Below, piece by piece: positions 21,501 to 56,900 of a stretch of DNA of 64,000 nucleotides. The translations under genes were made by a program, and so were the position numbers. Source of the stretch: Lytechinus pictus. Taxonomy: Eukaryota. The notes under the pieces are model-generated. The model did not search any database. It saw only the letters and a list, made by a program, of their open reading frames with translations, and was not told the origin of the DNA. The stretch is taken from positions 60,822,001-60,886,000 of the forward strand of contig NC_087247.1 in assembly GCF_037042905.1 (NCBI RefSeq), in the 5' to 3' direction. How positions within the stretch are numbered: position 1 is the stretch's first letter; the number at the start of each line of letters is the position of its first letter.

Positions 21501-24500
21501 AATGGAAAACCAAAACAAATGATGTTACTAAGTATCAATGCATAAATGCACCCCTAGAACAAATCCACAATATGCCATCTTGAAAAAAGTAAACCAATGT
21601 CTTTACCAAGTTTTAACATTCTACTTTACCATATTAAATCTGTTTTTATTACATTTTAAGTGAAATAGGATATTTTTTTTTTAAATGACACAATACTCTA
21701 TGACAAATTTTTACCTTGAGATAATCATAGTCACATGAAGGATGGGACTCTAAATGAAGATCACCAAATGCAATGGTGATATAACGGCCTGCATCCACAG
21801 TGATAGTCCAGACACAGTCACGATTGACAGGGTAGTCACCGGGATAGCCTGGTGATTGTAGGTTGCCATGGTTATCACCAATCAATTGACCACCACATAC
21901 TATAATCAAAGAAGAAGGCAATGTAGACTAAAAAGAACAATGGATATTTATTTTGTATTGTGTAAAATGTCATCCTAGATGCAGAATATATCTCATAGAA
22001 GATGTCATGATGAGAAAGAAAGAAGCTTGATGTTAAAGACTGGTTGAAAAGCGTAAGATGCTCAAAACAGTGGCGGTTTGAAATTCATTATTGCATGAAT
22101 ATCAGGATCTCTTTCCTCCACCCCATCCCGCAATAAAAAGGGCAAGGAGAAGAAAATTGCTTAAATTTATTATAGTAATGATGATGACCAACTTCGGGAG
22201 AAGGGGCGGGCATCCTTCAATGATGAATGTATAACTACTTCAACTCTCTGAAAATATATCACTAATATTAGAGCTCTGCTTTCCAGCAAATCATAAAACC
22301 AGACCTCCTTAACCTTCTACAGAAATATAAAATGAATATAAGAGAAGGAACTAACCTGGATCTCTGGCATTCCATAGTATTTTAAAGCCTCCACCGTTGA
22401 CACTGATATCACTAAAGAACCAGATATACAGTGTATCATGAGTAGATGTAATATTAGCAGGAGCATTTGAACCACAGTACTTTCCAATGGGATTAGCCGC
22501 TGCAGATGACCCATCATTGATTTGGAGAAAATCATAATTACAATCTGGATGTTCTTCAATGTCAAATCGCTCAAAGAAGAGACTGATAACCTGAAAAAAC
22601 AACAACAAACAGAGTTCTTAAAGACTTTAAAATTGATAATAATGACACATGAAGAACATCAGAGTTTATAATTTCCATGTACAAAGTGTGAAGAAGAATG
22701 TCTGTCATTCACAACACACTTTTCAATACAATTCTAAATAGCCCTTCTTGGATTATTCTGAAATAAATTATGTTCTTCAAAGCCCTAAAGATTTTAATAA
22801 GCGTTTGAGCGACAGTGAATCCTTTCATCTTTTACCACAACTTGTACTGGAACAATCTCACATTCAACCCAACATTTTTGGGTTTTTTTTTTTACTTGTT
22901 TCAAACCAAGTAGCTTATCGATCATACTCATTATGGATACAAAGGTAACAACAACACAAATATTTTTGAAAGGGTATTTCAAGTGAATCCCCTAACAGTG
23001 CAATGAAGTGTGACAAAGATGAATAAAAAAGCTCATTTGAATTGAGACAGACGGCTCTGATAAGAAATTATTGATTTTTTTTTCCTCAATGGTGTATATT
23101 TTTTAAACCAGTTCAGGAACTTTTCAGACAAACCTCAAATGCTGTTTATCATTAATATTTACCTTGTCATCATTAGTATCGATAACCCAGGCACAGCTAA
23201 CTCCATGAGGGTATGCCTGCCCTTCTCCAGGAAATTCAAAGGAACCAGAAAGACCAGTGAGGTAAGCTCCGCATGCTGTAAAACCAAAATAAAATTATCC
23301 TAAAAATTAACAAAAGAAGAGATTTTTTATTAAAGCACCGGTGTATAATTTATTTCTATAAATGATTCAAAACTAGCTAATCACTAAATAGTGAGCCAGT
23401 GCAAATGGTAGTCTGCAGAGGAGATTCATGAAGTTATATCAACTGATGTATCTAGGTGGGGTTTTTATCTAATAAATACATGGCTAAGAAAAGTTGAACT
23501 GCATTTAGCATCTTTAATAACCATGATTCCCAATACCTGCAGTATGCAATGGTTGTTGAATATTCTTCAAATATAAATATATCAATGGGATCTTTTAGGA
23601 TACAACCCTTTTTTTTTTGGGGGGGGGGGGCAAAGATGAATTCTTGTCTGCACTATGGCTGATTTCACGGAACATGACCTTACCAACGCTTGTATCTGTA
23701 CAGGTATCTCCAGTCCATCCAGTTGGACATTGGCAGACAAATCCATTGACATCATCTGTACATGTTCCTCCATTCTGACAAGGATTAGTTGAGCAATCAT
23801 TAATATTCACATCACAGTTTGTACCCGTCCATCCAGGATCACAGATACATATGTATCCAGTACCTGTGTACTCACAGCGTCCATGAACACAGGGATTGTC
23901 ATTGCAGGAGGTACCTGATGCACTGCAGCCCCCATTACCAATACCTGAACCAGTGTACCCACTGGGACAGGTACAAGTCCGACCATCGGAAACACCTAGG
24001 ATCAAAACAAATATTGACTGAGATTTTACACAGAGACTTGCTTTGTATCATTTTTTTTTCTCTAGAAATCAGTAAGTAATTGATGGTCAAGTGTGTGTCC
24101 AATCTCAATTGATGTTTTTTTATGGATTTGAAAGCATTTATTTCTAGTATTTACCTTCATTTAAGCATAGAAATATTCAGATATCTAAATAGATCTACTA
24201 ATACTTTCATGCTTGATGTTATTTCAACATAAAGGCACTTTATAAATAATTCTTTTTAAAGAAAAGCCCTAATATTTCTCAAGTAAAATTTATTTAAGTA
24301 ATGAAATTAAAATTGAATATTGGGCATCTGAAGCATAAAATTCATAAAGCATATACAGGATATTCTAAGAAAAATAATATTAAAGGGATGGTCCGGGCTG
24401 AAAGAATTTATAGTTTAATAAATAGAGTAGAATTCACTGAGCAAAATGCCAAAAATTTCATCAAAATCGGATAACAACTAACAAAGTTATTGAATTTTAA

Positions 24501-26667
24501 AGTTTAGCACTATTTTGTGAAAACAGTCATCATGAATATTCATTAGATGGGCTGATGATGTCACATCTCCACTTGTTCTTTTGTATTTTATTATATGAAA
24601 ATAGGTTTATTCAATTTTTTTCCTCCAAGAACTAGAAAAATTGGATTGACATCTGATTTAGTGCATTAGATATTTATTGCTGCAACTTATTTCATTATAA
24701 GGGAGACTTATTATTCACACAAGTGTAAAATAATGAAAAAAAATATGATTTTATGTAATAACATTAGAAAACGGAAAGTGGAGATATGACATCAGCAGCC
24801 AACCTAATGAATATTCATGACAACTGTTTTCACGAAATATTGCTAAACTTTAAACTTCAATAACTGTATTATTTGTTATCCGATTTTGATGAAATTTTCG
24901 GCATTTTGCTCAGTGAATTCTACTCTATGTAATAAGATATAAATATTTTCAGCCCGGACCATCCCTTTAATTTTTGAGAAAGCTTACCTGAATTTTCTTG
25001 ACAGGTTGCTATTGGGTCACATCCACCATTATTAACATTGCAGATACCCACATACGTACATGTTACACCATCTCCAATATAACCTAAATAATGCAATAAG
25101 GAAGAAATAATTCTTATAATCAAGATATCAAACTGCAGTGATGAAAGCTTTTCAACCAGCTGAATTGCATTTAAAACATAATTTTTTTTAAAGAGATTCA
25201 TGGAATTTTGAGAATTTTTGAGAAAAAAAATGAAGAGAAGATATGAGTACGTAAAGGACAAGTCCACCCCAACAACAAATTTATTTGAATAAAAAGAGAA
25301 AAATCCAATAAGCATAACACTGAAAGTTTTATCAAAATCGGATGTAGAATAAGAAAGTTATGACATTTTAAATTTTCGCTTAATTTCAGAAAAGTTGAAA
25401 ACACTAATACTTGGAAATCCTCATAAGTCACAAATGATCATTTCCAAATTATTCTGGCACATTGTTAGCCTAAATTGTTCAGTTCATTTATTTCAAATTC
25501 CATATAAAAATAACATTTAAAAAAATTACATATAATACACAACAGGAGAGCAAAGATTAAACAATAATTTGGTATACATGGTATATACAAATAGTGTTAA
25601 CATATTGTAGTTATAACAGGAATTAGGGGAAAGCCACAAAAAGCCAGATGGCTTGTTGAGCAGGCTACCCTAGTAGGGGGAAATAAATTATTGTCAATAT
25701 TAAAATAAAACCAGATATGAAACTATATTGAAATTAAATTAACAGAAGAATAGGACAGATACCACACAACCCTATACAAAGCAGCATATCTAAAATATTT
25801 AAGATGTTAGCAAGTATTTCTTAAGTTTCCTTTTGAATACGTTAAGTGTTTTACAAGACCGAATTTCATTTAAAAAAGACCATTCCAAACTTTTGGGGCA
25901 CGATGTCGAAAAGATTGGTGTAAACATTTTTGCAACTGGGTATAAGTGATAATTTTCCCTAGTTCTTGTGTTATAACTATGTATATTACAATTTTTATTT
26001 ATCATACAGGAAATTGTGTTATGAAGAATTTTATTTTCATGTTTAAATATAAGTATTGCAATAACTTAGGTAAGATAGGATTAATGTATTATACAAAGTC
26101 AAAAGGACTAGTTGAGGGATAATATGATGGAGTTTGCTGATAACACCAACATTTTTTGCTACCTTATTTGTAATAGTAGAAATTTGAATACTCCATGATA
26201 ATTTTTCATCTATTAAAACACCTAAAAATTTTGTATGATGGACACGTTCAATAATTTTATCATTCATTTTGATTTGAAAATTATCCAAAGATTGCTGTGT
26301 TGACTTTTTTGAGTTGATATGAAAATATACATAATTAGATTTGTCTGTATTCAATAAAAGTTTATTTGAAGAGAACCAGAGTGAGACTTTCTTCAGTTCA
26401 GTATTAAGTAAAGTATTTAATGAAGAAAACAAATCACTGGAGATTAAAATGTTGGTGTCATCAGCAAACAAAATAAATTTGAGTTTGTCTGTGCAATATG
26501 GTAGATCATTGATAAAAATTAAAAATAACAGTGGGCCCTGAATGGACCCTTGAGGAACGCCACATGAAATTGAACGAGAGTCAGACAGGGTTTCATTGTA
26601 TGATACATATTGGGATCTATCATACAAATAATGTTTGAACCAAAGTCTCTTTTGACATGTATGTATG

Positions 26668-26705
<38 letters not shown>

Positions 26706-26916
26706 GTATAGTAATAGGGTGGAGCGAGTTGCTTAGATTTTAGTTGTACAGACTGTTTCCCCCTGAGGGTTCATCAGCAACTGATGAACCCTCAGGGGGA
26801 AACAGTCTGTACAACTAAAATCTAAGCAACTCGCTCCACCCTATTACTATACTACATGAAGCTCCTATATGTACATGTAGTTGAGCACTTTTCAGTAACT
26901 GCAGTTTCGTATAGTC

Positions 26917-26953
<37 letters not shown>

Positions 26954-29900
26954 TGAACAGTTAATCTCTTTAAAGCAAGACACACAATACAGATTTGATA
27001 TAATGTATTATGAACAAAGATAAATGTACTATTATAAGAATAAGGTAAGCAAAAAGTTTTTTTGGGGGGGGGAGGCAGGTGGTTTAGTTATTTTTTGTCC
27101 ATCAAATCCTGGGAGAGTTGTACGTCAGTGACATGACAAATCTTTTTTACTTTGCCAAATGGGAGGGTCTCCAATGCATTAGCATTCTCAATGTTAAATG
27201 GTAAATCATATGCTCTCATAATAATACTATTATTATAATGTACTTTCTTCTGTCCAATTTTTTTAACTTCCATTAATCTTATTCCTTGAATTTTCTGTTT
27301 CTACACAAGGTAAATTGTTCAAAGAGCTTCATTGTCCTATAATGCCATATCTAATTTCCTATTCTAAAAAAAAATGAAGAACACAGAGTGCATCTTGAAA
27401 AACATCAAGATACAAAACCAAACCAAAGCAATTCAACAAAATAACTGGGCATACTACTGTTGTCTGCAATGTTATCTAAAAAAATTGAATATGTAGGAAA
27501 TATATATTATAAATTGATTAATCCAGACATGACTGGAAAATTTTATTTCTGGTCACTAAACAAAGCAAAAAGTCATACCATTTTATGTTTTTTAACTTAC
27601 AAAATGTCTTATACTATTTTACATTTTTCTTTTATTTCTCATATCACATGTGATTCCTTGCAATTAGTGATGCATTTTTTCAAAATTCATTACTAAATGA
27701 AAGTTTTCTTTTCAATGTTGGGAGAATGCACACAATTAACCTCATTCTTATTTAAAGCATTATTTTTAGCACAGTATTTGACAACCAAGACCTAGATATC
27801 AATTAAATGTTTCTGTGGAAGCAAATATAAATAGTGCAATGAAGCTCAATGAAAAACAAGAGATGCTATTTAGCAATGTCACAATTGAAGAAACCATTAA
27901 AGGTATTTATGTGATTATATGTAACAGGCCCTGGGATGAAAAAAAAACTTCTGAAAGAATGCATTGGGCATTATCTCAGATCTGATTGTTTAGACTGCCT
28001 CTGAATTCAAACAAGTTTGCACTTAGGCTCAGCCATTCATTGTTTGCTGTGTTATGTAACATATATTATTACCATCTATCTGCTGTGATTTAGGTTCATG
28101 TAAGTAATCTATCTGGTGGCTGGTACAGAGATGGTCATAAAAATGTGCTTAATTCTTCTTTTAAAGGAAATATAAACCAAAGGTTCAAAAGAAGGTTCAT
28201 GTAAGTAATCTATCTGGTGGCTGGTACAGAGATGGTCATAAAAATGTGCTTAATTCTTCTTTTAAAGGAAATATAAACCAAAAGTTCAAAAGATGGTTCA
28301 TGTAAGTAATCTATCTGGTGGCTGGTACAGAGATGGTCATAAAAATGTGCTTAATTCTTCTTTTAAAGGAAATATAAACCAAAAGTTCAAAAGATGGTTC
28401 ATGTAAGTTACCTTTCTGGTGGCTGGTACAGAGAAGGTATTAAAAATGTGCTTAGTTCTTTTTTGAAAAAAAATATAAACCAAAAGTTCCAAGGATGCAA
28501 AGATAGCCTATGGAGGTTTATAGTTACATTTATATAGCGCTTCATACTTTGCATATCTAAGTGCTTTACAAGTCTTATAAATAGCCCAGTCATCGCATCC
28601 TGGCATGCCCACACACAATGTATGAAGTATACCAAAAATAGACCTATGCATTTCATAATTTGCTATACCTATTATATAAAAAAAGATTGATAGTGACAGT
28701 ACTATTGATAATATCCACATATTTTAGGAGTCAAATATCCAATCCAAGAGAGAATCATTTACTGTGCATCCATGGGCAGAGTGTGTGCACAATTACATTA
28801 TAAAACAATAGAAATCAGGATGATGACAGTCTTGTGTTTTCAGCTTGTCAATTACTCCGATTGAAAATCTGCATATAGCACAAATACAAAAAAACCAAGC
28901 ACTATCTATAACTATCAATAACCAGACATTTTGGCTATGTTGTAGAGTGCCCGCCTCATGAATGGAAGGTCATGGTTTAATTCAAGGCTGAATCATCTCA
29001 AAAACTTTTAAAAATGTGCCTTCCTGCCAGGCACTTAGTATTTTTTAAACTACAACACTACACTACAAATCACACGCATCCGAGAATAAATCGACAATGG
29101 TACGCCAGGCTAAACGATCTAACATGAAAAAGAATAAGAATGGCAATAGAAACATATTGATGTTGTGAAGGGCAAGCTTGAAGGTCAGCATTTTGCTAGA
29201 GTGACTATCTTGGTTAATTAAGAACTAGTGTTACTATCTTTCAATTCTACAACCCCTATTCCATATCCTTGCATAATTTTGAGCCAAATTCCCCAATTAC
29301 AACCCTAATCCTAACCCAACATCTACATTGATAGATTGCCATAGTAAGCATCTGGGGAGTGTTTCATGAAAAGCCATGTCAGTGATTTTCATTAAAAGAT
29401 GTTATAAGCTACTGGAAATTCTTGCATCTGATTGGATGAGATCATATTAGTCAGTGAAAATCATTGATAAGAATGCTCCCCAGGTGAGTAATACATACCT
29501 GCTGGGCAAGGTCCACATGATCTTGATCCATCAGTGTTTGTACATGTTACCAACTGAGAGCATCCACCGTTATTAGTAAGGCATTCATTGATATCTGTAC
29601 ACTGGTGACCATTACCATCATAACCTAAACAAAACAAAGAGAAATTCATGTATAATTATTGCCATAGGGGACAACATTTCATCATAAATAATCAGAAGCA
29701 ATGTAAGCATTATCAACAAAATCATAACTAAAAGGCATACTGACCATCTCTGATGTTGTATTGAAAAAAATACAATGTTTTGAGTTTATACCTGAAGGGC
29801 AGTTTCCACAGTAGTAAGTTCCATCCACATTGGTACAGCTGACTCGAGGGTTGGAAGAACAAGGATATTTAGCTGCCGAACACTCATCAATATCAGCGCT

Positions 29901-35900: not shown

Positions 35901-38900
35901 ATCCTTCCGGGTACCCATTCACCTCACCTGGGTTGAGTGCAGCACAATGTGGATAAATTTCTTGCCGAAGGAAATTACGCCATGGCTGGGATTTGAACCC
36001 ACGACCCTCTGTTTCAAAGTCCGGAGACTAATCCACTGGGCCACAACGCTCCACATGATAATTTTTTGTGTAAATATTCTTTGCACCATTGCTAAAAATT
36101 GCTATTGAAAATAATCCTGGTTTGAAATTGAATTTCTTTTGTATTTTATTGTTTTATGAATTCATGTATTTCTTTGTTTTTTTTACCCTTTGTTTTTCTT
36201 TGTCCTTTTACCAAATTTATTGCAGAGCCTTTTGAAGCATTATTATGCTAAAATCAATTAACTCCAGGTGATAAAAATAATATCTTTATGAATAAGATGA
36301 GAAAACTCAATTTACATTGACTTCATACACAAAATAACATTTTAGGGCAATTATGGGTCTGACATGCACTTACGTAATTTTCGAATCCCATACCCAGGCA
36401 TCGTAAATTTGGTCTCAAAAGATGCGCAAGACTTCAAAGAAAAAGTCAGGTGCAGTTGAAAAATTTCGCACATCGGAATGGTCGCAAAAAATGGCAGTTT
36501 GCGAGTTAATAAATTAAAAAAACTTAACAGATTTATGATGCATGCACATACAACTAAATTGCCTCAACTACAAATGATTAGTGAGTGAAAAAAAAAAAAA
36601 AATTTCAGTCTGGCATAATAAAAATTGGTATTCAAAGTGACAAAGAAATCAATTAGCTGAAGCTTCACTAAGACTTTTACCTTAGCCTGACTTGCAGAAA
36701 TTTGGAAAGAATAGGAGAATTGTATTTATTGAAATGTACACATACATGTATGTTCATGTATACATGGTGTAAATGTAAAGCTGAGGATTTGCTCTTTCAT
36801 ATTCTGGTGACTTTGAAAGGTAATATCAGAATAATAGCCCTATTTAATAACTTGGATTATCTTTTTTTTTAATCCATATCCAGTAAATATTAAGAAAGGA
36901 AAAGTAATGGCAAAAATAATCAATTTTGATTGCTTGCCAAAAAATAAATTCATAAAGAAGAGAAAGAAAAATGCTAAATTCTAAAACAGACTGGTTGAAG
37001 TCTGTGTCAATCATTTAGAAGTACAAAACCTATAGGTCATTAGACTGCCTTGAGGCATTGACTAGTATGTTGAATGTCAATATCTGTTTATCTTTACAAC
37101 ACTTAATGTAAAGTGTAACTAAACACCTCAAGCGAGTTGTCAGAAGCCTTGAATAAAGTGGGCCAGAGATGTACAATTACCAACAATGTCAGATCAAAAT
37201 TTGTTCCTTCTCATATACCCCAAAATATTCTCCATGATTCTGAGATATTCCAATGTTCATAGCAATGGACAAAGATAAGTCAATATGGCACAATGTGTAT
37301 AGGAATATAGGCCTATACAGCAATTAATTAGTCTGGCTGCATAAAACAGGGAGCAATCAGTAAAATTAGCACATGTCTCTGATTTTCTCTCTTTTCAGAG
37401 GGGGGGGGGGGGGGGAGGGCTGGGGAGCATTTGAATTTAAAATGAGGTGTAAGTGATTTTCAACAGCTGTCATTAGCTATATCCTTGCATCTTTATATTG
37501 GCCGAGGTACAAAAATAATGAAAAGTAATGAAAAGGTGCATTGCCGGTAAGTATTTAAACATCAACTTACCTGCCATGCAGATGTACACAGGCACATGAA
37601 CTTGTCATACATATCGATACACGTACCACCATTTCTGCATGGATTGCTTGAGCATTCATTGACGGTTAAAATCTGTGAAACACAAGATATCATTAATACT
37701 AAATAGGTTCATTATTGTGGACTGAAATAATTGCTAGAGGGTATTCATTTGTCTCGCAATCTACTATGGTCAACAAGGAAATTCGTGATCACTCTCGCAA
37801 GATATCATTTTAGAAAAAAATAATATTCGCAGGATGTCATGGAAACAAGCGGAGGGTATCAGCTAAAAGAAAGAGGCCATTTCAAAACTTGATATAATAG
37901 TGTGTCTTGATGTAATAGAAAAGAGTTGACCGTGTAAGTAGTAGAACTATACCACTGTATTTAAAAAAATACAGTTTAATCAATTACATGTACCTATGCA
38001 CCATGCACTCTTTTCACTTGTACATATGCATACACCGAATTAGATGTGTAAAAATAATTCTTAACCTTTAACAAGACTGTTTCCAGATAAGATAACATTT
38101 GAGGGAAATGTAATTAATACTTACATTGTAATTTTCTTCCAAATCTGATACCTAAGAGGTGAAATAATGAAAATAAAGTTGAAGTTTAGAAAAAGATATA
38201 AAAAAAGGACAATGGCAACATACATGGAAATATTATAATTCTTTTTTTAACATATGAATAAAGTAGATATACAGTACTGGGTATATGTATACAGTGCATT
38301 TCAGAAAAAAGGTAATCCAAATCTAGAGGGCCGATATTCGGATCATATTTAATTTGGTGAAATTATTCTGCATGGATATAAAAGAGAAACCCCGTCAGCT
38401 TTTCATTGATACCCTATTTGTACCATTTGCGCCATGCATGACCGAACTAATTGATGTTGAAGACAACAGGTGCAGGTACCACTTTTTCCAAGTTATGGCT
38501 TAGTGGGTAAAATGTGTGCTTGATAGAATAAAATGCAAAAAAGTATTTTTTGGAAAGAAAAGTCAAGGCATTCCTTTGAAATGATGATTGAAAGGTTAAT
38601 GTCTTATTCACCCACACCTTCATCATGTCTGCTTCTCCTTTGCACACAAAACCAGTAGCGTGGAGGAATTAAGGATAACTTGGACAGATCGTCTTACCAT
38701 TGCCAGATCATTGCAAAAAAGCATCCACCTCATGTTGAATTTGGCCCTGCAAATCATCAAGATCTTGAGAAGGAATTACAAATGCCTTATTTAAAGTGTC
38801 TCCAAAGGAAATAATCACAGGGCGCAAGGTCAGGGGATCTTGGTGGCCATTCTTCTTCATGGTTGAGAGCAACAACTTGATGTCCAGAGAGTTCTTTGAG

Positions 38901-53900: not shown

Positions 53901-56900
53901 ATTCACGTTACTAACATTATCATCACAAATATCACATGTATGAATGGGTTCTTGAGAAACCTCTGATTTTTATTCAAATAAAAATACTTTTGACTTCTCT
54001 TTCACTCTCCCCCCATTTCCTCAATCCCCTCCCCTATTAAAGTGACCCTGACCTCTGATTAACCCAATATGAAAATCCTGGAGTAACCACTCCACCACTG
54101 CCCCACCTCTTAAAGGGGAAGTTCACCCTGACAAAAGTTTATTGTAAAAATAGCAGAAAAACAATGTTTGTGCAACGTTGTAAGAAGGCCGTAAGAACCT
54201 ATGCCCCATCTATGAATCCTTCCTTCCGAATTCCAGAATTAGCACAGATCAGCGATTTATTAAAAGGGGTTTATTTTCATGATTCATCTGTTTAAAGTAT
54301 ATATATTGAATATTAAAGTTATTAGAAATTTTTTTTATTTGTGATGTGATATGCGAGCAGCTTTCCATGATCATGAGTTAAGAGAATATCAATAAAATTA
54401 CATTTTCTCAAAAATTGATGGGTTTTATTATACTATTAGTAGTATATCAACAGAAAAAATATTTCACATCCACTCCTGAAAGGAAAAAAAATTGGTAGTT
54501 ATCACAAACCATTAAAAAAATTTGAATTATATTACATAACATGGGGCTGCTGCTCGTATGGGGGGCATAACGGTGCCAGGTAAAAATGGCAGAGGTAAAA
54601 ATGGCAGAAGTAATAATGGCAGAGGTAATAATGGCAGAGGTAATAATGGCAGAGGTAATAATGGCAGAGGTAAAAATGGCACAGGTAAAAATGGCAGAGG
54701 TAAAAATGGCAGAGGTAAAAATGATAGAGATAGGCTACATCATAATAATTATCATCCTTGACCGGACTCTTGTCCACGAAATGGGCTATAAAATTGATTA
54801 AATATTATGTTGTTTTTCGTCATTTAAGATCTATACTCTGTCATATAGATATTGATGTCACTGGTGGATCCATGGGGCACAGCCGGCCCGTGCCCCCCCC
54901 CCCCCCCCCTTGAGAGGTACAATTAAAATCTTAGCAAATATGCGGTTCTAACTCAAGTGTGCCCACTTTTTAAAGCGAGACTCTTTTCTGCTTGCTAATT
55001 ATTTTTTGTGGATGAGTTAGGTGGAAAACTTTTTTGCGTGTCATTTTTCAGGAAAATGTGCCCCCTCTCCTTGGAAAATCCTGGATCTGTCCCTGATTAA
55101 TGTGATAGGTTAAATGTAAATGATTATCAGTTCAGTCTTTAGAGAAATACCTCAATGCAGCTAGTCCAAGTGGATGTCAGGTTCACAATGGGTTTGACGT
55201 CATATATGGGAAGCTGCCCCATGATATTTTATGCACTTCAAAATGGTTCATAATTGTTTTTAAAAAATATTTCAGGAGCGTAAGTGAAATGATTTGTCTC
55301 TTAATATATTCTGAAGATACAAAAAAAAAAAGATTTTTCTAGAAAATAACATTTCATTAATATTTTCTATACACCAAATATGGAAAAACTGCTCGCAAAT
55401 GACGTCATCATTAAAATATAAAAGTATAGCTTTTTCAATCTTTTATTGATTTCCTAAAACCCTCACCAATATCATTTTATTTTTTTCTGCTATTCTACAA
55501 TGACTTTTAACTGAGGTTGAACTTCCCCTTTAATGATTTAAGTACAATTGCGATCAAGAGTGTGCTTCAAATTTGAATATTAATACAGCGATTTGACATG
55601 AGAAGGCCGTCCATGAGAGTCCAGAAGAAATAAGATAATCCAGCCAAAAGGTAATCAATTTGATGCAGACGATCTATCTATGATTTAAAAAATGTCACCC
55701 TTTCCATTATTTTTATTTTCTTAGAATCTTTCTTAGTTAATCTATGTAGGGCTTACATGCGGGGGCTTCTTGATTTTTTTTCGCATGGGGGTTTAAGACC
55801 CTTTTAGACGATACCATTATGACCTCTGCCATTTTTACCTCTGCCATTATTACCTCTGCCATTTTTACCTCTGCCATTATTACCTCTGCCATTTTTACCT
55901 CTGCCGTTATTACCTCTGCCGTTATTACCTCTGCCATTTTTACCTCTGCCATTTTTACCTCTGCCATTTTTACCTCTGCCATTTTTACCTCTGCCATTAT
56001 TACCTCTGCCATTTTTACACCGAGCCGGCATAACGGCCCCCCTTCTGATCTCGACACGCACATTCTTTACCACGTAAACTACAAGCTAGTATAAAAAAAA
56101 GTCTGAATATAATTATTTTTTTTTATTATCATGAATAAAATATGCAAATTTATTCATGAAAAAAATTATTTAAGTATTTAAACACCCTATTTCACTTCAA
56201 ATTTTCTTCTTTTTTTGAAGATGTCATCTTTGTAATCTAATTTAATTTCCAAATCCAAATTCAAATTCCATTGACAGAAACATTCAAGTCCCAGTTGAAA
56301 ACTTATTTGATCTCCCATTAAAAGTTTGTTTATTCAGGAGAATTCAAAATTCTTTTCTTTTTCGTTTTCTATTATTGCTTGTGTGTTGTGTTTATTTCTC
56401 TTGAAATGCCATAAGCACCAAAAGGTGGACCTGTGCGCTATATAAGTAGCCACCATTATTATCATTAAAGGTTTCCACAAAGAAATATTGCGAAAGCTAA
56501 TTTTTTCTCTTTATGTATTTCATTGTTTTTAGAATTTCTTATGTGTTTCTTTGTGTTTCATCTTTTTTTATTGATTTTACAATGGAAATTATTACAGACC
56601 ATTTAAAGGGATGGTCCGGGCTGTAAGTATTTATAGCTTAATAAATAGAGTAGAATTCACTGAGCAAAATGCCGAAAAATTTCATCAAAATCGGATAACA
56701 AATAACAAAGTTATTGAATTTTAAAGTTTAGCAATAATTTTGTGAAAACAGTTGTCATGAATATTCATTAGGTGGGCTGATGATGTCACATCCCCCCTTG
56801 TTCTTTTGTATTTTATTATATGAAATTAGGTTTATTCAATTTTTTTCCTCCAAGAACTAGAAAAATTGGATTGACAACTGATTTAGCGCATTACATATTT

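What the first reader, a model, noticed from the sequence alone, without database searches (positions are those of the whole stretch)
26704..26918. Intronic hammerhead ribozyme locked inside its own perfect 74-bp antisense hairpin
Seen: the minus strand of 26742-26782 reads AGUUG CUGAUGA A CCC UCAG GGG GAA ACAG U CUGU A CAACU. This has every conserved hammerhead core base, a 5-bp stem I, a 3-bp stem II after one extra A, and a near-palindromic stem III. The predicted cut after GUA falls between 26747 and 26746. It is sense to the cubilin pre-mRNA (intron 9). It forms one arm of a perfect 74-bp inverted repeat with a 3-nt loop. The plus-strand mirror copy has the core but no 5' stem I partner. 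(TA)n flanks both sides. Known: minimal hammerheads with palindromic stem III occur in Penelope-like element terminal repeats, are thought to cleave as dimers, and these repeats are often inverted. Inference: the antisense arm is transcribed first and would sequester the ribozyme. That would be a built-in off-switch sparing the host transcript, and would also create a dsRNA substrate for Dicer or ADAR.
Basis: partly seen in the sequence, partly recalled or inferred. Interest (0 to 1): 0.82.

Follow-up and report, generated by a model that had tools for sequence, protein, structure and literature searches.

The report
Truncated Penelope-like retroelement hairpin in intron
The "ribozyme locked in a hairpin" is real sequence, but it is an ordinary insertion scar: two tiny head-to-head end-fragments of a young Penelope-like retrotransposon in a (TA)n repeat inside a sea-urchin intron, not a built-in switch.

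Summary
There is a 74-bp perfect inverted repeat (77 bp with one mismatch, 3-nt loop). The minus strand carries a complete hammerhead core with a 5-bp stem I. (TA)n lies on both sides. The feature sits in a spliced intron of a minus-strand EGF/CUB (cubilin-like) gene.

The 138 nt at 26781-26918 are the 3' end of a young 2,507-bp retroelement. It has at least 71-89 copies at 92-100% identity and some intact 703-aa ORFs. It matches the published hallmarks of the Hydra clade of Penelope-like elements (PLEs): DKT motif, CxCX5C linker, C-terminal GIY-YIG, (TA)n target, sense-strand hammerhead in the 3' UTR.

In full copies the ribozyme has an 8-bp stem I. Four more diverged PLE families in this genome carry the same motif with compensatory changes.

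The window holds two extremely 5'-truncated copies joined head to head. The inverted one lacks the 59-61-nt "tail". About 11 of 25 independent loci show the same layout, and it is described for PLEs.

The hairpin (-145.6 kcal/mol) does swamp the ribozyme fold (-4.7). That is an insertion by-product, not a device. RNA-seq shows normal splicing and almost no intron reads. Interest is low.

The parts
26668..26705 (.). Left part of the (TA)n microsatellite that served as insertion target
   Evidence: Sequence and repeat families. Other copies of the family are also flanked by (TA)n.
26701..26780 (-). Inverted, 5'-truncated copy of the retroelement's 3' UTR (about unit positions 2369-2448 of 2507). 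It lacks the 59-61-nt tail. It is the sense copy on the minus strand.
   Evidence: BLAST of a natural full unit (L032:7305-9811) against the loci: L003 carries unit 2367-2448 on the opposite strand. The same outer end (2445-2448) is seen in 10 of 11 loci with an inverted partner.
26742..26782 (-). Hammerhead motif with all core bases. Stem I is 5 bp (TTG from the element, AG from the junction). Stem II is 3 bp after one extra A. Helix III is a 9-mer palindromic around a central U. The predicted cut is at 26747/26746.
   Evidence: The fold energy of this structure is -4.7 kcal/mol.
26778..26780 (.). 3-nt hairpin loop and junction between the two truncated copies
   Evidence: The canonical upstream sequence is TTTAGTTG, so the TTG on the minus strand comes from the element.
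26781..26918 (+). Direct, 5'-truncated copy of the element's 3' end (unit 2372-2507). It is cut exactly at C3 of CTGATGA, so the 5' strand of stem I is missing.
   Evidence: 100% identical over 138 nt to three other loci and 92-100% identical to the 40 scored copies. Mapped to the unit.
26858..26918 (+). The 'tail': the terminal 61 nt, present only on the direct copy and ending ...TAGTCATTA at the (TA)n
   Evidence: The concept of a tail lying between two reverse-transcription start sites comes from PMC11167929 and PMC8557442.
26919..26953 (.). Right part of the (TA)n target microsatellite
25084..29498 (-). Host intron (GT..AG on the minus strand) that contains the whole feature
   Evidence: RNA-seq junction 25081>29497 with 23, 31 and 21 reads in three stranded runs. 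Splice dinucleotides checked. Flanking EGF exons on the minus strand.

Best explanation
Window 26701-26918 is the scar of one retrotransposition event. The element is a young Penelope-like retroelement of the Hydra clade that inserted into a (TA)n microsatellite inside an intron.

The element is 2,507 bp long. [quoted passage not shown] Its roughly 360-nt 3' UTR carries a type I 'minimal' hammerhead on the sense strand.

Only the last 138 nt were copied in the direct orientation (26781-26918, plus strand). A second copy of 77-80 nt, lacking the terminal tail, was attached head to head (26780-26701, minus strand). Together they form a perfect hairpin.

Shown here:
- the parent element, its copies and its tandem arrangement;
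- the recurrent inverted-partner layout;
- the fixed tail-less outer end of the inverted partners;
- conservation and covariation of the ribozyme across families;
- the host intron and its strand.

Inferred from published PLE biochemistry: the nuclease cuts both target strands, reverse transcription starts at either of two internal sites (with or without the tail), and the two short cDNAs are joined, or one snaps back.

At this locus the ribozyme is a remnant. In the host pre-mRNA it is a single sense copy with a fortuitous 5-bp stem I. It has no tandem partner for the dimeric helix III, and it is buried in a 77-bp duplex. It is expected to be inert and is removed with the intron.
For: Repeat family: the 138-nt unit is a dispersed repeat with 40 scored copies at 92-100% identity. 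Exhaustive pattern counts give 39, 71 and 89 copies for unit positions 2328-2363, 2372-2407 and 2409-2444.

Canonical ribozyme: in full copies the element's sense strand reads TTTAGTTG CTGATGA ... GTA CAACTAAA, an 8-bp stem I.

Parent element:
- Upstream lies an ORF ending in NVIYEA...KVYIGLT.
- An intact 703-aa ORF is at L037:673-2784.
- Tandem 3' ends lie 2,507 bp apart in L032.
- Hydra-clade diagnostics from PMC8557442 section 11 are all present in the ORF: PADKT, RWR, the CNCRKKEDC linker (CxCX5C), CNLC, CKH, length under 3 kb, (TA)n target, hammerhead.
- The ESM Atlas nearest clusters are cnidarian and ctenophore proteins of about 700 aa. Related clusters carry GIY-YIG and RVT_1.

Ribozyme conservation: five hammerhead types occur in PLE families with 45-68% protein identity. 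All lie in the sense 3' UTR. They show compensatory changes in stems I, II and III, and every helix III 9-mer is palindromic at 4 of 4 pairs. These 9-mers form no monomer hairpin but self-duplex at -7.4 to -10.2 kcal/mol.

Insertion layout:
- Head-to-head partners occur at about 11 of 25 independent loci. The outer end is at unit 2445-2448 in 10 of 11.
- Four tight palindromes have four different junctions.

Literature:
- Inverted 5'-truncated copy, tail and (TA)n bias: PMC8557442.
- Both strands cut and extended, and two RT start sites define the tail: PMC11167929.

Host transcript: the intron is spliced normally in RNA-seq.
Against: - Pfam finds neither RVT_1 nor GIY-YIG in the ORF, even at E<=10. 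The protein assignment therefore rests on motifs, published clade descriptions and a language-model lead, not on a profile hit or a phylogeny.
- Rfam hammerhead models do not score the motif. They also miss the intact copy and the four other families, so this is a limit of the models.
- The tail is 59-61 nt, against the 30-40 nt usually quoted.
- Short-read contigs from other runs break at the (TA)n and do not bridge the palindrome. The exact structure at this locus therefore rests on one assembly.
- The joining mechanism (two primed cDNAs or snap-back) is not resolved.
Confidence: 0.88

Rival explanations
1. This is a functional intronic ribozyme whose antisense arm is an evolved off-switch. 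The arm is transcribed first, sequesters the ribozyme and protects the cubilin-like pre-mRNA.
For: - The minus strand is the pre-mRNA sense strand, and the antisense arm lies upstream in the transcript.
- The hairpin outcompetes the ribozyme fold by about 68 kcal/mol.
- The intron is spliced normally.
Against: - The same architecture arises at many unrelated loci of the family with variable junctions, so it needs no selection at this locus.
- The copy is 100% identical to other copies. It is therefore very recent, with no time for selection to act.
- Stem I is partly a junction accident.
- There is no second sense copy for the dimeric helix III.
- Monomers of this ribozyme class are inactive in vitro (PMC4209133). 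One PLE ribozyme needs its own protein (PMC11167929).
Confidence: 0.03
2. Incidental dsRNA source. This is compatible with the best explanation as a side effect. The 77-bp perfect intronic hairpin is processed by Dicer or edited by ADAR, giving small RNAs that could target the active PLE family.
For: - The RNA hairpin is perfect and 77 bp long, at -145.6 kcal/mol.
- It lies in an intron that is transcribed and spliced.
- Generic miRNA-hairpin models give sub-threshold matches.
- The family has intact ORFs that would be targets.
Against: - No data support it. rRNA-depleted long-RNA libraries show depth of 0-1 over the hairpin, and those reads could come from any of about 70 other copies.
- No A>G changes are listed there.
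- All miRNA matches are far below their gathering scores, for example 75 against 195 bits.
Confidence: 0.12
3. Assembly artefact. The perfect palindrome was created by the assembler or by a chimeric long read in a (TA)n-rich region.
For: - Independent short-read contigs stop at 26546 and resume at 27097, so nothing else bridges the structure.
- PLE insertions are known to be hard to assemble (PMC8557442).
Against: - The structure is asymmetric in exactly the way PLE biology predicts: a tail on one side only, and an outer end at unit 2448.
- It recurs at independent loci with distinct junctions.
- Artefactual palindromes are usually much longer and symmetric.
Confidence: 0.04
4. A miniature inverted-repeat DNA transposon (Tc1/mariner-type MITE) with terminal inverted repeats and a TA target-site duplication.
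For: Inverted arms flanked by TA-rich sequence on both sides.
Against: - The arms are identical to the 3' UTR of an RT-encoding element.
- The right arm continues into a 61-nt tail that the left arm lacks.
- Junction positions vary between loci.
- Most copies have one arm only and continue into the ORF.
Confidence: 0.01

Closest known systems
Complex insertions of Penelope-like elements: a pseudo-LTR plus an adjacent inverted 5'-truncated copy, with a one-sided tail (Evgen'ev & Arkhipova 2005; Craig et al. 2021, PMC8557442, fig. 2)
   Same: A head-to-head inverted 5'-truncated copy lies next to the direct copy. The tail is on one side only. The target is a (TA)n microsatellite. The hammerhead lies in the terminal repeat region.
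   Different: This is an extreme miniature. Both copies are truncated to 77-138 nt, so only the ribozyme region and the 3' end remain and the arms form a tight hairpin with a 3-nt loop. The tail is 59-61 nt rather than 30-40 nt.
Hydra clade of C-terminal EN+ PLEs (Craig et al. 2021, PMC8557442, section 11)
   Same: Under 3 kb, a single ORF, DKG changed to DKT, an RWK-like motif (RWR), a CxCX5C linker, CxxC and CxH motifs in the nuclease, insertion into (TA)n, a canonical hammerhead. The clade is reported in Echinodermata.
   Different: The paper names a sea cucumber, not a sea urchin. Clade placement here rests on motifs only, with no phylogeny. Absence of the CCHH motif was judged by eye only.
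Minimal type I hammerheads of metazoan PLEs (Cervera & de la Pena 2014, PMC4209133)
   Same: [quoted passage not shown]
   Different: Position 10.1-11.1 is C-G rather than the usual G-C. Helix III is a 9-mer palindrome with an odd central base (U.U, A.A or C.C in the dimer). The window copy has lost or shortened stem I.
Non-LTR retrozymes, small tandem hammerhead repeats mobilised by PLEs (Cervera & de la Pena 2020, PMC7229834; bioRxiv 10.64898/2026.07.22.740005)
   Same: Short non-coding sequence derived from a PLE terminal region and carrying a type I hammerhead.
   Different: Retrozymes are direct tandem repeats that can give circular RNAs. Here the two copies are inverted, so one transcript holds one sense and one antisense ribozyme and cannot form the dimer or a unit-length RNA.

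Membership tests
Hammerhead ribozyme (type I, PLE minimal kind) | Conserved core in order: C3 U4 G5 A6 N7 G8 A9 ... G12 A13 A14 ... A15.1/U16.1, H17 | tested here: met
   The minus strand of 26777-26747 reads CTGATGA ... GAAA ... T A. The identical core is present in 50 exact genomic copies.
Hammerhead ribozyme (type I, PLE minimal kind) | Helix I closes the core | tested here: met
   5 bp on the window's minus strand, 8 bp in canonical copies, none on the window's plus-strand copy.
Hammerhead ribozyme (type I, PLE minimal kind) | [quoted passage not shown] | tested here: met
   A + CCC/GGG with loop TCAG. The hallmark is named in PMC4209133.
Hammerhead ribozyme (type I, PLE minimal kind) | Helix III stable in a monomer | tested here: not met
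   The 9-mer ACAGUCUGU forms no hairpin (0.0 kcal/mol). Its self-duplex is -8.3 kcal/mol. This fits the dimer-dependent minimal class, and the window's transcript has no second sense copy.
Hammerhead ribozyme (type I, PLE minimal kind) | Covariation in the helices among relatives | tested here: met
   Five types in PLE families at 45-68% protein identity, with compensatory changes in stems I, II and III. This is family-level evidence, not evidence about this copy.
Hammerhead ribozyme (type I, PLE minimal kind) | Match to the Rfam hammerhead covariance models | tested here: inconclusive
   No hit at E<=10 on 601 nt or on 55 nt. The models also miss the intact 8-bp-stem copy and four other PLE hammerheads.
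Hammerhead ribozyme (type I, PLE minimal kind) | Self-cleavage at the predicted site | not testable with these tools
   RNA-seq depth over the site is 0-1 reads and no ends can be called.
Penelope-like element, Hydra clade (parent of the fragment) | [quoted passage not shown] | tested here: inconclusive
   A 703-aa ORF is present. Pfam gives no RVT_1 or GIY-YIG hit. The ESM Atlas neighbours include GIY-YIG and RVT_1 clusters. The paper notes that Hydra RT motif 4 and the nuclease are divergent.
Penelope-like element, Hydra clade (parent of the fragment) | Hydra diagnostics: DKT instead of DKG, RWK-like motif, CxCX5C linker, CxxC and CxH around the nuclease E/N, length under 3 kb | tested here: met
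   PADKT, RWR, CNCRKKEDC, NVIYEA..KVYIGLT, CNLC and CKH in L037:673-2784. The unit is 2,507 bp. The criteria come from PMC8557442 section 11.
Penelope-like element, Hydra clade (parent of the fragment) | Insertion into (TA)n | tested here: met
   Most of 30 loci end ...TAGTCATTA followed by (TA)n. Truncated 5' ends also abut (TA)n.
Penelope-like element, Hydra clade (parent of the fragment) | Partial tandems (pseudo-LTR), adjacent inverted 5'-truncated copies, one-sided tail | tested here: met
   Tandem 3' ends are 2,507 bp (L032) and 2,491 bp (C9) apart. Inverted partners occur at about 11 of 25 loci, ending at unit 2445-2448 in 10 of 11.
Penelope-like element, Hydra clade (parent of the fragment) | RT phylogeny places it within the clade | not tested
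MITE / TIR DNA transposon | Symmetric terminal inverted repeats that bound the element, with no relation to a retroelement | tested here: not met
   The arms are the 3' UTR of an RT-encoding element. One arm carries a 61-nt extension. Junctions vary between loci.
miRNA precursor (Rfam families MIR8007, mir-3173, mir-1641, mir-231) | Score at or above the family's gathering threshold | tested here: not met
   75 against 195, 49 against 84, 41 against 104 and 39 against 50 bits. These are generic long-hairpin matches.

The most novel reading that the evidence does not exclude
The folded or protein-bound hammerhead region may act as a stop or strand-switch point during PLE reverse transcription. 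In that case the ribozyme motif would help create the inverted pseudo-LTRs.

The evidence is suggestive only. Among the 10 independent loci whose inner junction or 5' end falls in unit 2328-2373, 7 lie within the 11 nt 2363-2373, at the 5' edge of stem I. That is roughly 2.5 expected. The four tightest palindromes are centred there.

A second open reading is that such tight intronic hairpins feed small-RNA silencing of the still-intact family.
Probability: 0.1. Interest if true: 0.5.

Novelty: new member of a known kind. Interest (0 to 1): 0.2.

Why it matters
For the finding as posed, the result is deflationary. A striking 'ribozyme in a hairpin' in a gene's intron turns out to be the usual debris of Penelope-like retrotransposition, not a regulatory device.

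It has modest value in three ways:
- It documents an apparently recently active Hydra-clade PLE in a sea urchin, with intact 703-aa ORFs and copies 98-100% identical.
- It gives a clean natural series of head-to-head junctions and tail-less ends. These fit the two-start-site, both-strands model proposed from in vitro work on a vertebrate PLE.
- It shows that current Rfam hammerhead models miss all five PLE hammerhead types of this genome.

Tried and rejected
- Rfam scans of the region (601 nt and 55 nt, E<=10) and of the whole window at gathering thresholds gave no hammerhead hit. A control on an intact copy and four other PLE hammerheads was also blank. I therefore set the Rfam result aside as uninformative.
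- Pfam on six ORF pieces and on the intact 703-aa ORF gave nothing relevant.
- RNA-seq laying was meant to find ends at 26746/26747, A-to-G edits or antisense transcripts. Intron depth was about 0-1 and the few reads cannot be assigned among copies, so no verdict is possible.
- Short-read contigs of another sample do not bridge the (TA)n, so there is no independent check of the palindrome and no presence/absence call.
- Test of a 5'-truncation hot-spot at the ribozyme's 5' edge. Pattern counts of 39, 71 and 89 give 32 ends in about 44 nt upstream of the core start and 18 ends in about 37 nt downstream of it. Truncation is dense across the whole 3' region. The finer clustering at 2363-2373 rests on only 10 loci. 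I kept it as a lead, not a finding.
- The MITE and miRNA readings were rejected (see membership tests).
- I built no consensus of the element. All comparisons used natural copies.

Full report
**1. The observation.** The sequence is as described.
- The repeat finder gives arms 26701-26777 and 26781-26857, 77 nt, 99% complementary, with 3 nt between them.
- Read base by base, 26704-26777 pairs perfectly with 26781-26854 (74 bp). The only mismatch is 26703/26855.
- The minus strand of 26782-26742 reads AGTTG CTGATGA A CCC TCAG GGG GAA ACAG T CTGT A CAACT. All hammerhead core positions are present, and the predicted cut lies between 26747 and 26746.
- The plus-strand copy starts exactly at CTGATGA (26781) and is preceded by AGCAA, so it has no stem I partner.
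- (TA)n lies directly left of the left arm. On the right it begins after a further 61 nt, at 26919.

**2. What the unit is.**
- A search of the window's own genome (812 Mb) with 26781-26918 returned 40 scored copies at 92-100% identity, three of them 100% identical over all 138 nt.
- Exhaustive pattern searches with up to 2 mismatches find the 36-nt ribozyme core 71 times (50 exact), a 36-mer just downstream 89 times and a 36-mer just upstream 39 times. The reversed controls give zero.
- In most copies the 138 nt are the end of a longer element. They are preceded by ...ATTTGATTTAGTTG and followed directly by (TA)n after ...TAGTCATTA.
- Extending upstream shows coding sequence that ends about 360 nt before the element's 3' end.
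- In L032 two 3' ends lie 2,507 bp apart, head to tail. Between them lies an ORF broken into 245-aa and 427-aa pieces.
- On another contig the ORF is intact at 703 aa (L037:673-2784). A genome search with the C-terminal 427 aa finds open frames of 700 and 719 aa at 98% identity.

**3. Which family.** Pfam recognises nothing in the ORF. The protein nevertheless shows the diagnostic features that Craig et al. 2021 (PMC8557442, section 11, read) list for the Hydra clade of C-terminal-nuclease Penelope-like elements (PLEs):
- length under 3 kb and a single ORF;
- DKG changed to DKT (PADKTNNYY);
- an RWK-like motif (RWR) and a divergent RT motif 4, with YRDDGL as the RT active-site motif;
- a CxCX5C linker (CNCRKKEDC) just before GIY...YIG (NVIYEA...KVYIGLT);
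- CxxC (CNLC) and CxH (CKH) further on;
- insertion into (TA)n and a hammerhead.

That paper also reports the clade in echinoderms and notes that the Hydra nuclease and RT are hard to match with standard profiles. The ESM Atlas places the ORF next to cnidarian and ctenophore clusters of about 700 aa (score 0.99), and near clusters that carry GIY-YIG and RVT_1. This is a lead, not a proof. I did not run a phylogeny, so clade membership rests on motifs.

**4. The ribozyme is real at family level.**
- In canonical copies the element's sense strand has TTTAGTTG ... CAACTAAA, an 8-bp stem I.
- I took the 3' UTRs of more distant PLE families of the same genome, at 45-68% protein identity.
- Four further hammerhead types appear, always on the sense strand of the 3' UTR and never on the antisense strand.
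- They keep CTGA[TA]GA, GAAA and the T-H cleavage site. Stem I changes in a compensatory way (AGTTG/CAACT, AGTCG/CGACT, AGTTGC/GCAATT, GTCTGC/GCAGAC). Stem II varies in length and sequence. The third pair of helix III also covaries (A-T, T-A, C-G).
- In all five types the helix III 9-mer is self-complementary at 4 of 4 positions around an odd central base. None folds as a monomer hairpin, but each self-duplexes at -7.4 to -10.2 kcal/mol.
- This is the dimer-dependent minimal hammerhead of PLEs described by Cervera & de la Pena 2014 (PMC4209133). [quoted passage not shown]
- Rfam's hammerhead models find none of these, not even the intact copy. The blanks on the window therefore say nothing.

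**5. Why there is a hairpin.** I mapped a natural full unit (L032:7305-9811) on 30 loci.
- The window's right arm is unit 2372-2507, on the plus strand. The left arm is about unit 2369-2448, on the opposite strand.
- A head-to-head partner of this kind lies next to the direct copy at about 11 of 25 independent loci. Six loci on contig 21 are segmental duplicates and were counted once.
- In 10 of those 11 the inverted partner's outer end is at unit 2445-2448. It lacks the last 59-61 nt.
- The inner junction differs from locus to locus (unit 1455 to 2376). Four loci have tight palindromes within 30 nt of the core, each with a different junction sequence.
- In the pattern lists, every adjacent opposite-strand pair I noticed has the minus copy on the left and the plus copy on the right. 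I saw no tail-to-tail pair.
- Frangieh et al. 2024 (PMC11167929) showed that a PLE protein cuts and extends both target strands. Reverse transcription starts at two internal sites, and the interval between them is the tail.
- The window copy fits that model as an extreme case. Both cDNAs stopped after 77-138 nt.
- Whether two primed cDNAs were joined or one snapped back cannot be decided here. Near-equal inner ends at several loci hint at snap-back. The tail-less outer end hints at a second start site.

**6. The stem I on the minus strand.** The inverted copy keeps TTG of the canonical TTTAGTTG. The preceding AG is the complement of the CT that begins the other arm's CTGATGA. Three of the five pairs are therefore inherited and two are a by-product of the junction. 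The same ATCAGTTG context occurs at two other loci.

**7. Host context and RNA.**
- EGF exons (29464-29655, 23598-24047, 37565-37708) and CUB exons (21927 and below) are all on the minus strand.
- This matches the EGF-then-CUB order of cubilin. I did not verify the name or the intron number.
- Three stranded, rRNA-depleted RNA-seq runs of the same species label show junctions 25081>29497 (23, 31 and 21 reads) and 23993>24986 (12, 22 and 18 reads), with GT..AG on the minus strand.
- The feature therefore lies in a 4,415-nt intron (25084-29498) that is spliced out.
- Depth between 25550 and 29349 is at most about 2.4 per 200-nt bin and mostly 0. Over the hairpin bin it is 0-1, on both orientations, and cannot be told apart from reads of other copies.
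- No ends or edits can be called there.

**8. Energetics.**
- As RNA, the 157-nt minus-strand hairpin folds at -145.6 kcal/mol.
- The hammerhead structure alone is worth -4.7 kcal/mol, and -7.8 with the canonical 8-bp stem.
- The best fold of the 157-mer that is forced to contain the hammerhead helices is -77.7 kcal/mol, which is 67.9 kcal/mol worse.
- The ribozyme would be inert even without the hairpin. The transcript has one sense copy only, and the inverted arm gives antisense sequence, so the dimeric helix III cannot form in cis. Monomers of this class showed no cleavage in vitro (PMC4209133), and one PLE hammerhead cleaved only with its protein (PMC11167929).

**9. Verdict.** The motif, its PLE origin, the intron and strand, and the sequestration are all right. 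The 'built-in off-switch' is not supported. The hairpin is a routine, very recent insertion by-product of a Hydra-clade PLE. The arrangement recurs across the genome, so nothing needs explaining by selection at this locus. A side effect as a dsRNA source remains possible and untested. Novelty: a new member of a known kind. Interest: low.

Noticed in passing
L037:673-2784 (G000 C9:4477634-4479745) and G000 C8:7493642-7494922: The parent PLE family still has apparently intact ORFs: 703 aa in L037, and open frames of 700 and 719 aa at 98% identity. Many copies are 98-100% identical. This suggests recent or ongoing activity in this urchin genome.
   Followed up: partly
Unit positions 2363-2373 of the element (window 26772-26789 region; loci L002, L003, L004, L005, L015, L016, L020): 5' ends and palindrome centres cluster at the 5' edge of the hammerhead's stem I. 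Of the 10 independent loci with ends in unit 2328-2373, 7 fall there. Coarser pattern counts (39, 71, 89) show that truncation is dense all over the 3' region, so the hot-spot is suggestive only.
   Followed up: partly
G000 C21:5.70-6.40 Mb (L013, L014, L021-L024, L030): The same PLE insertion, with identical flanks and the same inverted 76-nt partner, recurs at least 7 times at roughly 87-115 kb spacing. This looks like a tandem segmental duplication array of about 100-kb units that arose after the insertion.
   Followed up: no
G000 C15:1.88-2.02 Mb: At least 12 matches to a distant PLE-like ORF (about 41% identity, open frames of 437-535 aa) lie mostly at exact 2,829-bp spacing. This appears to be a long head-to-tail tandem array of another PLE family.
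   Followed up: no
L010:1654-1714, L002, L004 (inverted), L018, L028 (four copies about 405 bp apart), L030: A second short repeat (...GTAAAGAAATGGATGAAGAGAACAATGGTAGGCG...) repeatedly abuts the same (TA)n tracts as the PLE copies. It may be the end of another (TA)n-targeting element.
   Followed up: no
L006/L033 and L056/L071: A fifth hammerhead type (GTC CTGATGA GCCGCC...GGCGC GAAAC CATTGGT A GAC) has only a 3-bp contiguous stem I. It occurs in two sequence variants with compensatory stem II and loop changes.
   Followed up: partly
window 24350-25549: This stretch next to the 96-nt exon 24986-25081 is a very high-copy repeat. Contig word depths reach the tens of thousands. RNA reads lie on both strands, with many strand-switch and 'goes back' joints and a sharp pile of read ends at 25348. 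It is probably another transcribed transposable element.
   Followed up: no
window 23990: Every RNA read shows G where the assembly has A (17/17, 29/29 and 19/19), inside the EGF exon. It is most likely a strain or allele difference rather than editing. No DNA of the same animals was available.
   Followed up: no
window 54535-54804 (-) and 55797-56030 (+): Open frames consist of a repeated 5-residue unit ([10 protein letters not shown]), which indicates a 15-bp minisatellite present in both orientations about 1 kb apart.
   Followed up: no
Rfam release 15 versus L008, L043, L048, L054, L056: None of the five PLE hammerhead types of this genome is detected by any Rfam hammerhead model at E<=10. 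This is a sensitivity gap for minimal, dimer-type hammerheads.
   Followed up: yes
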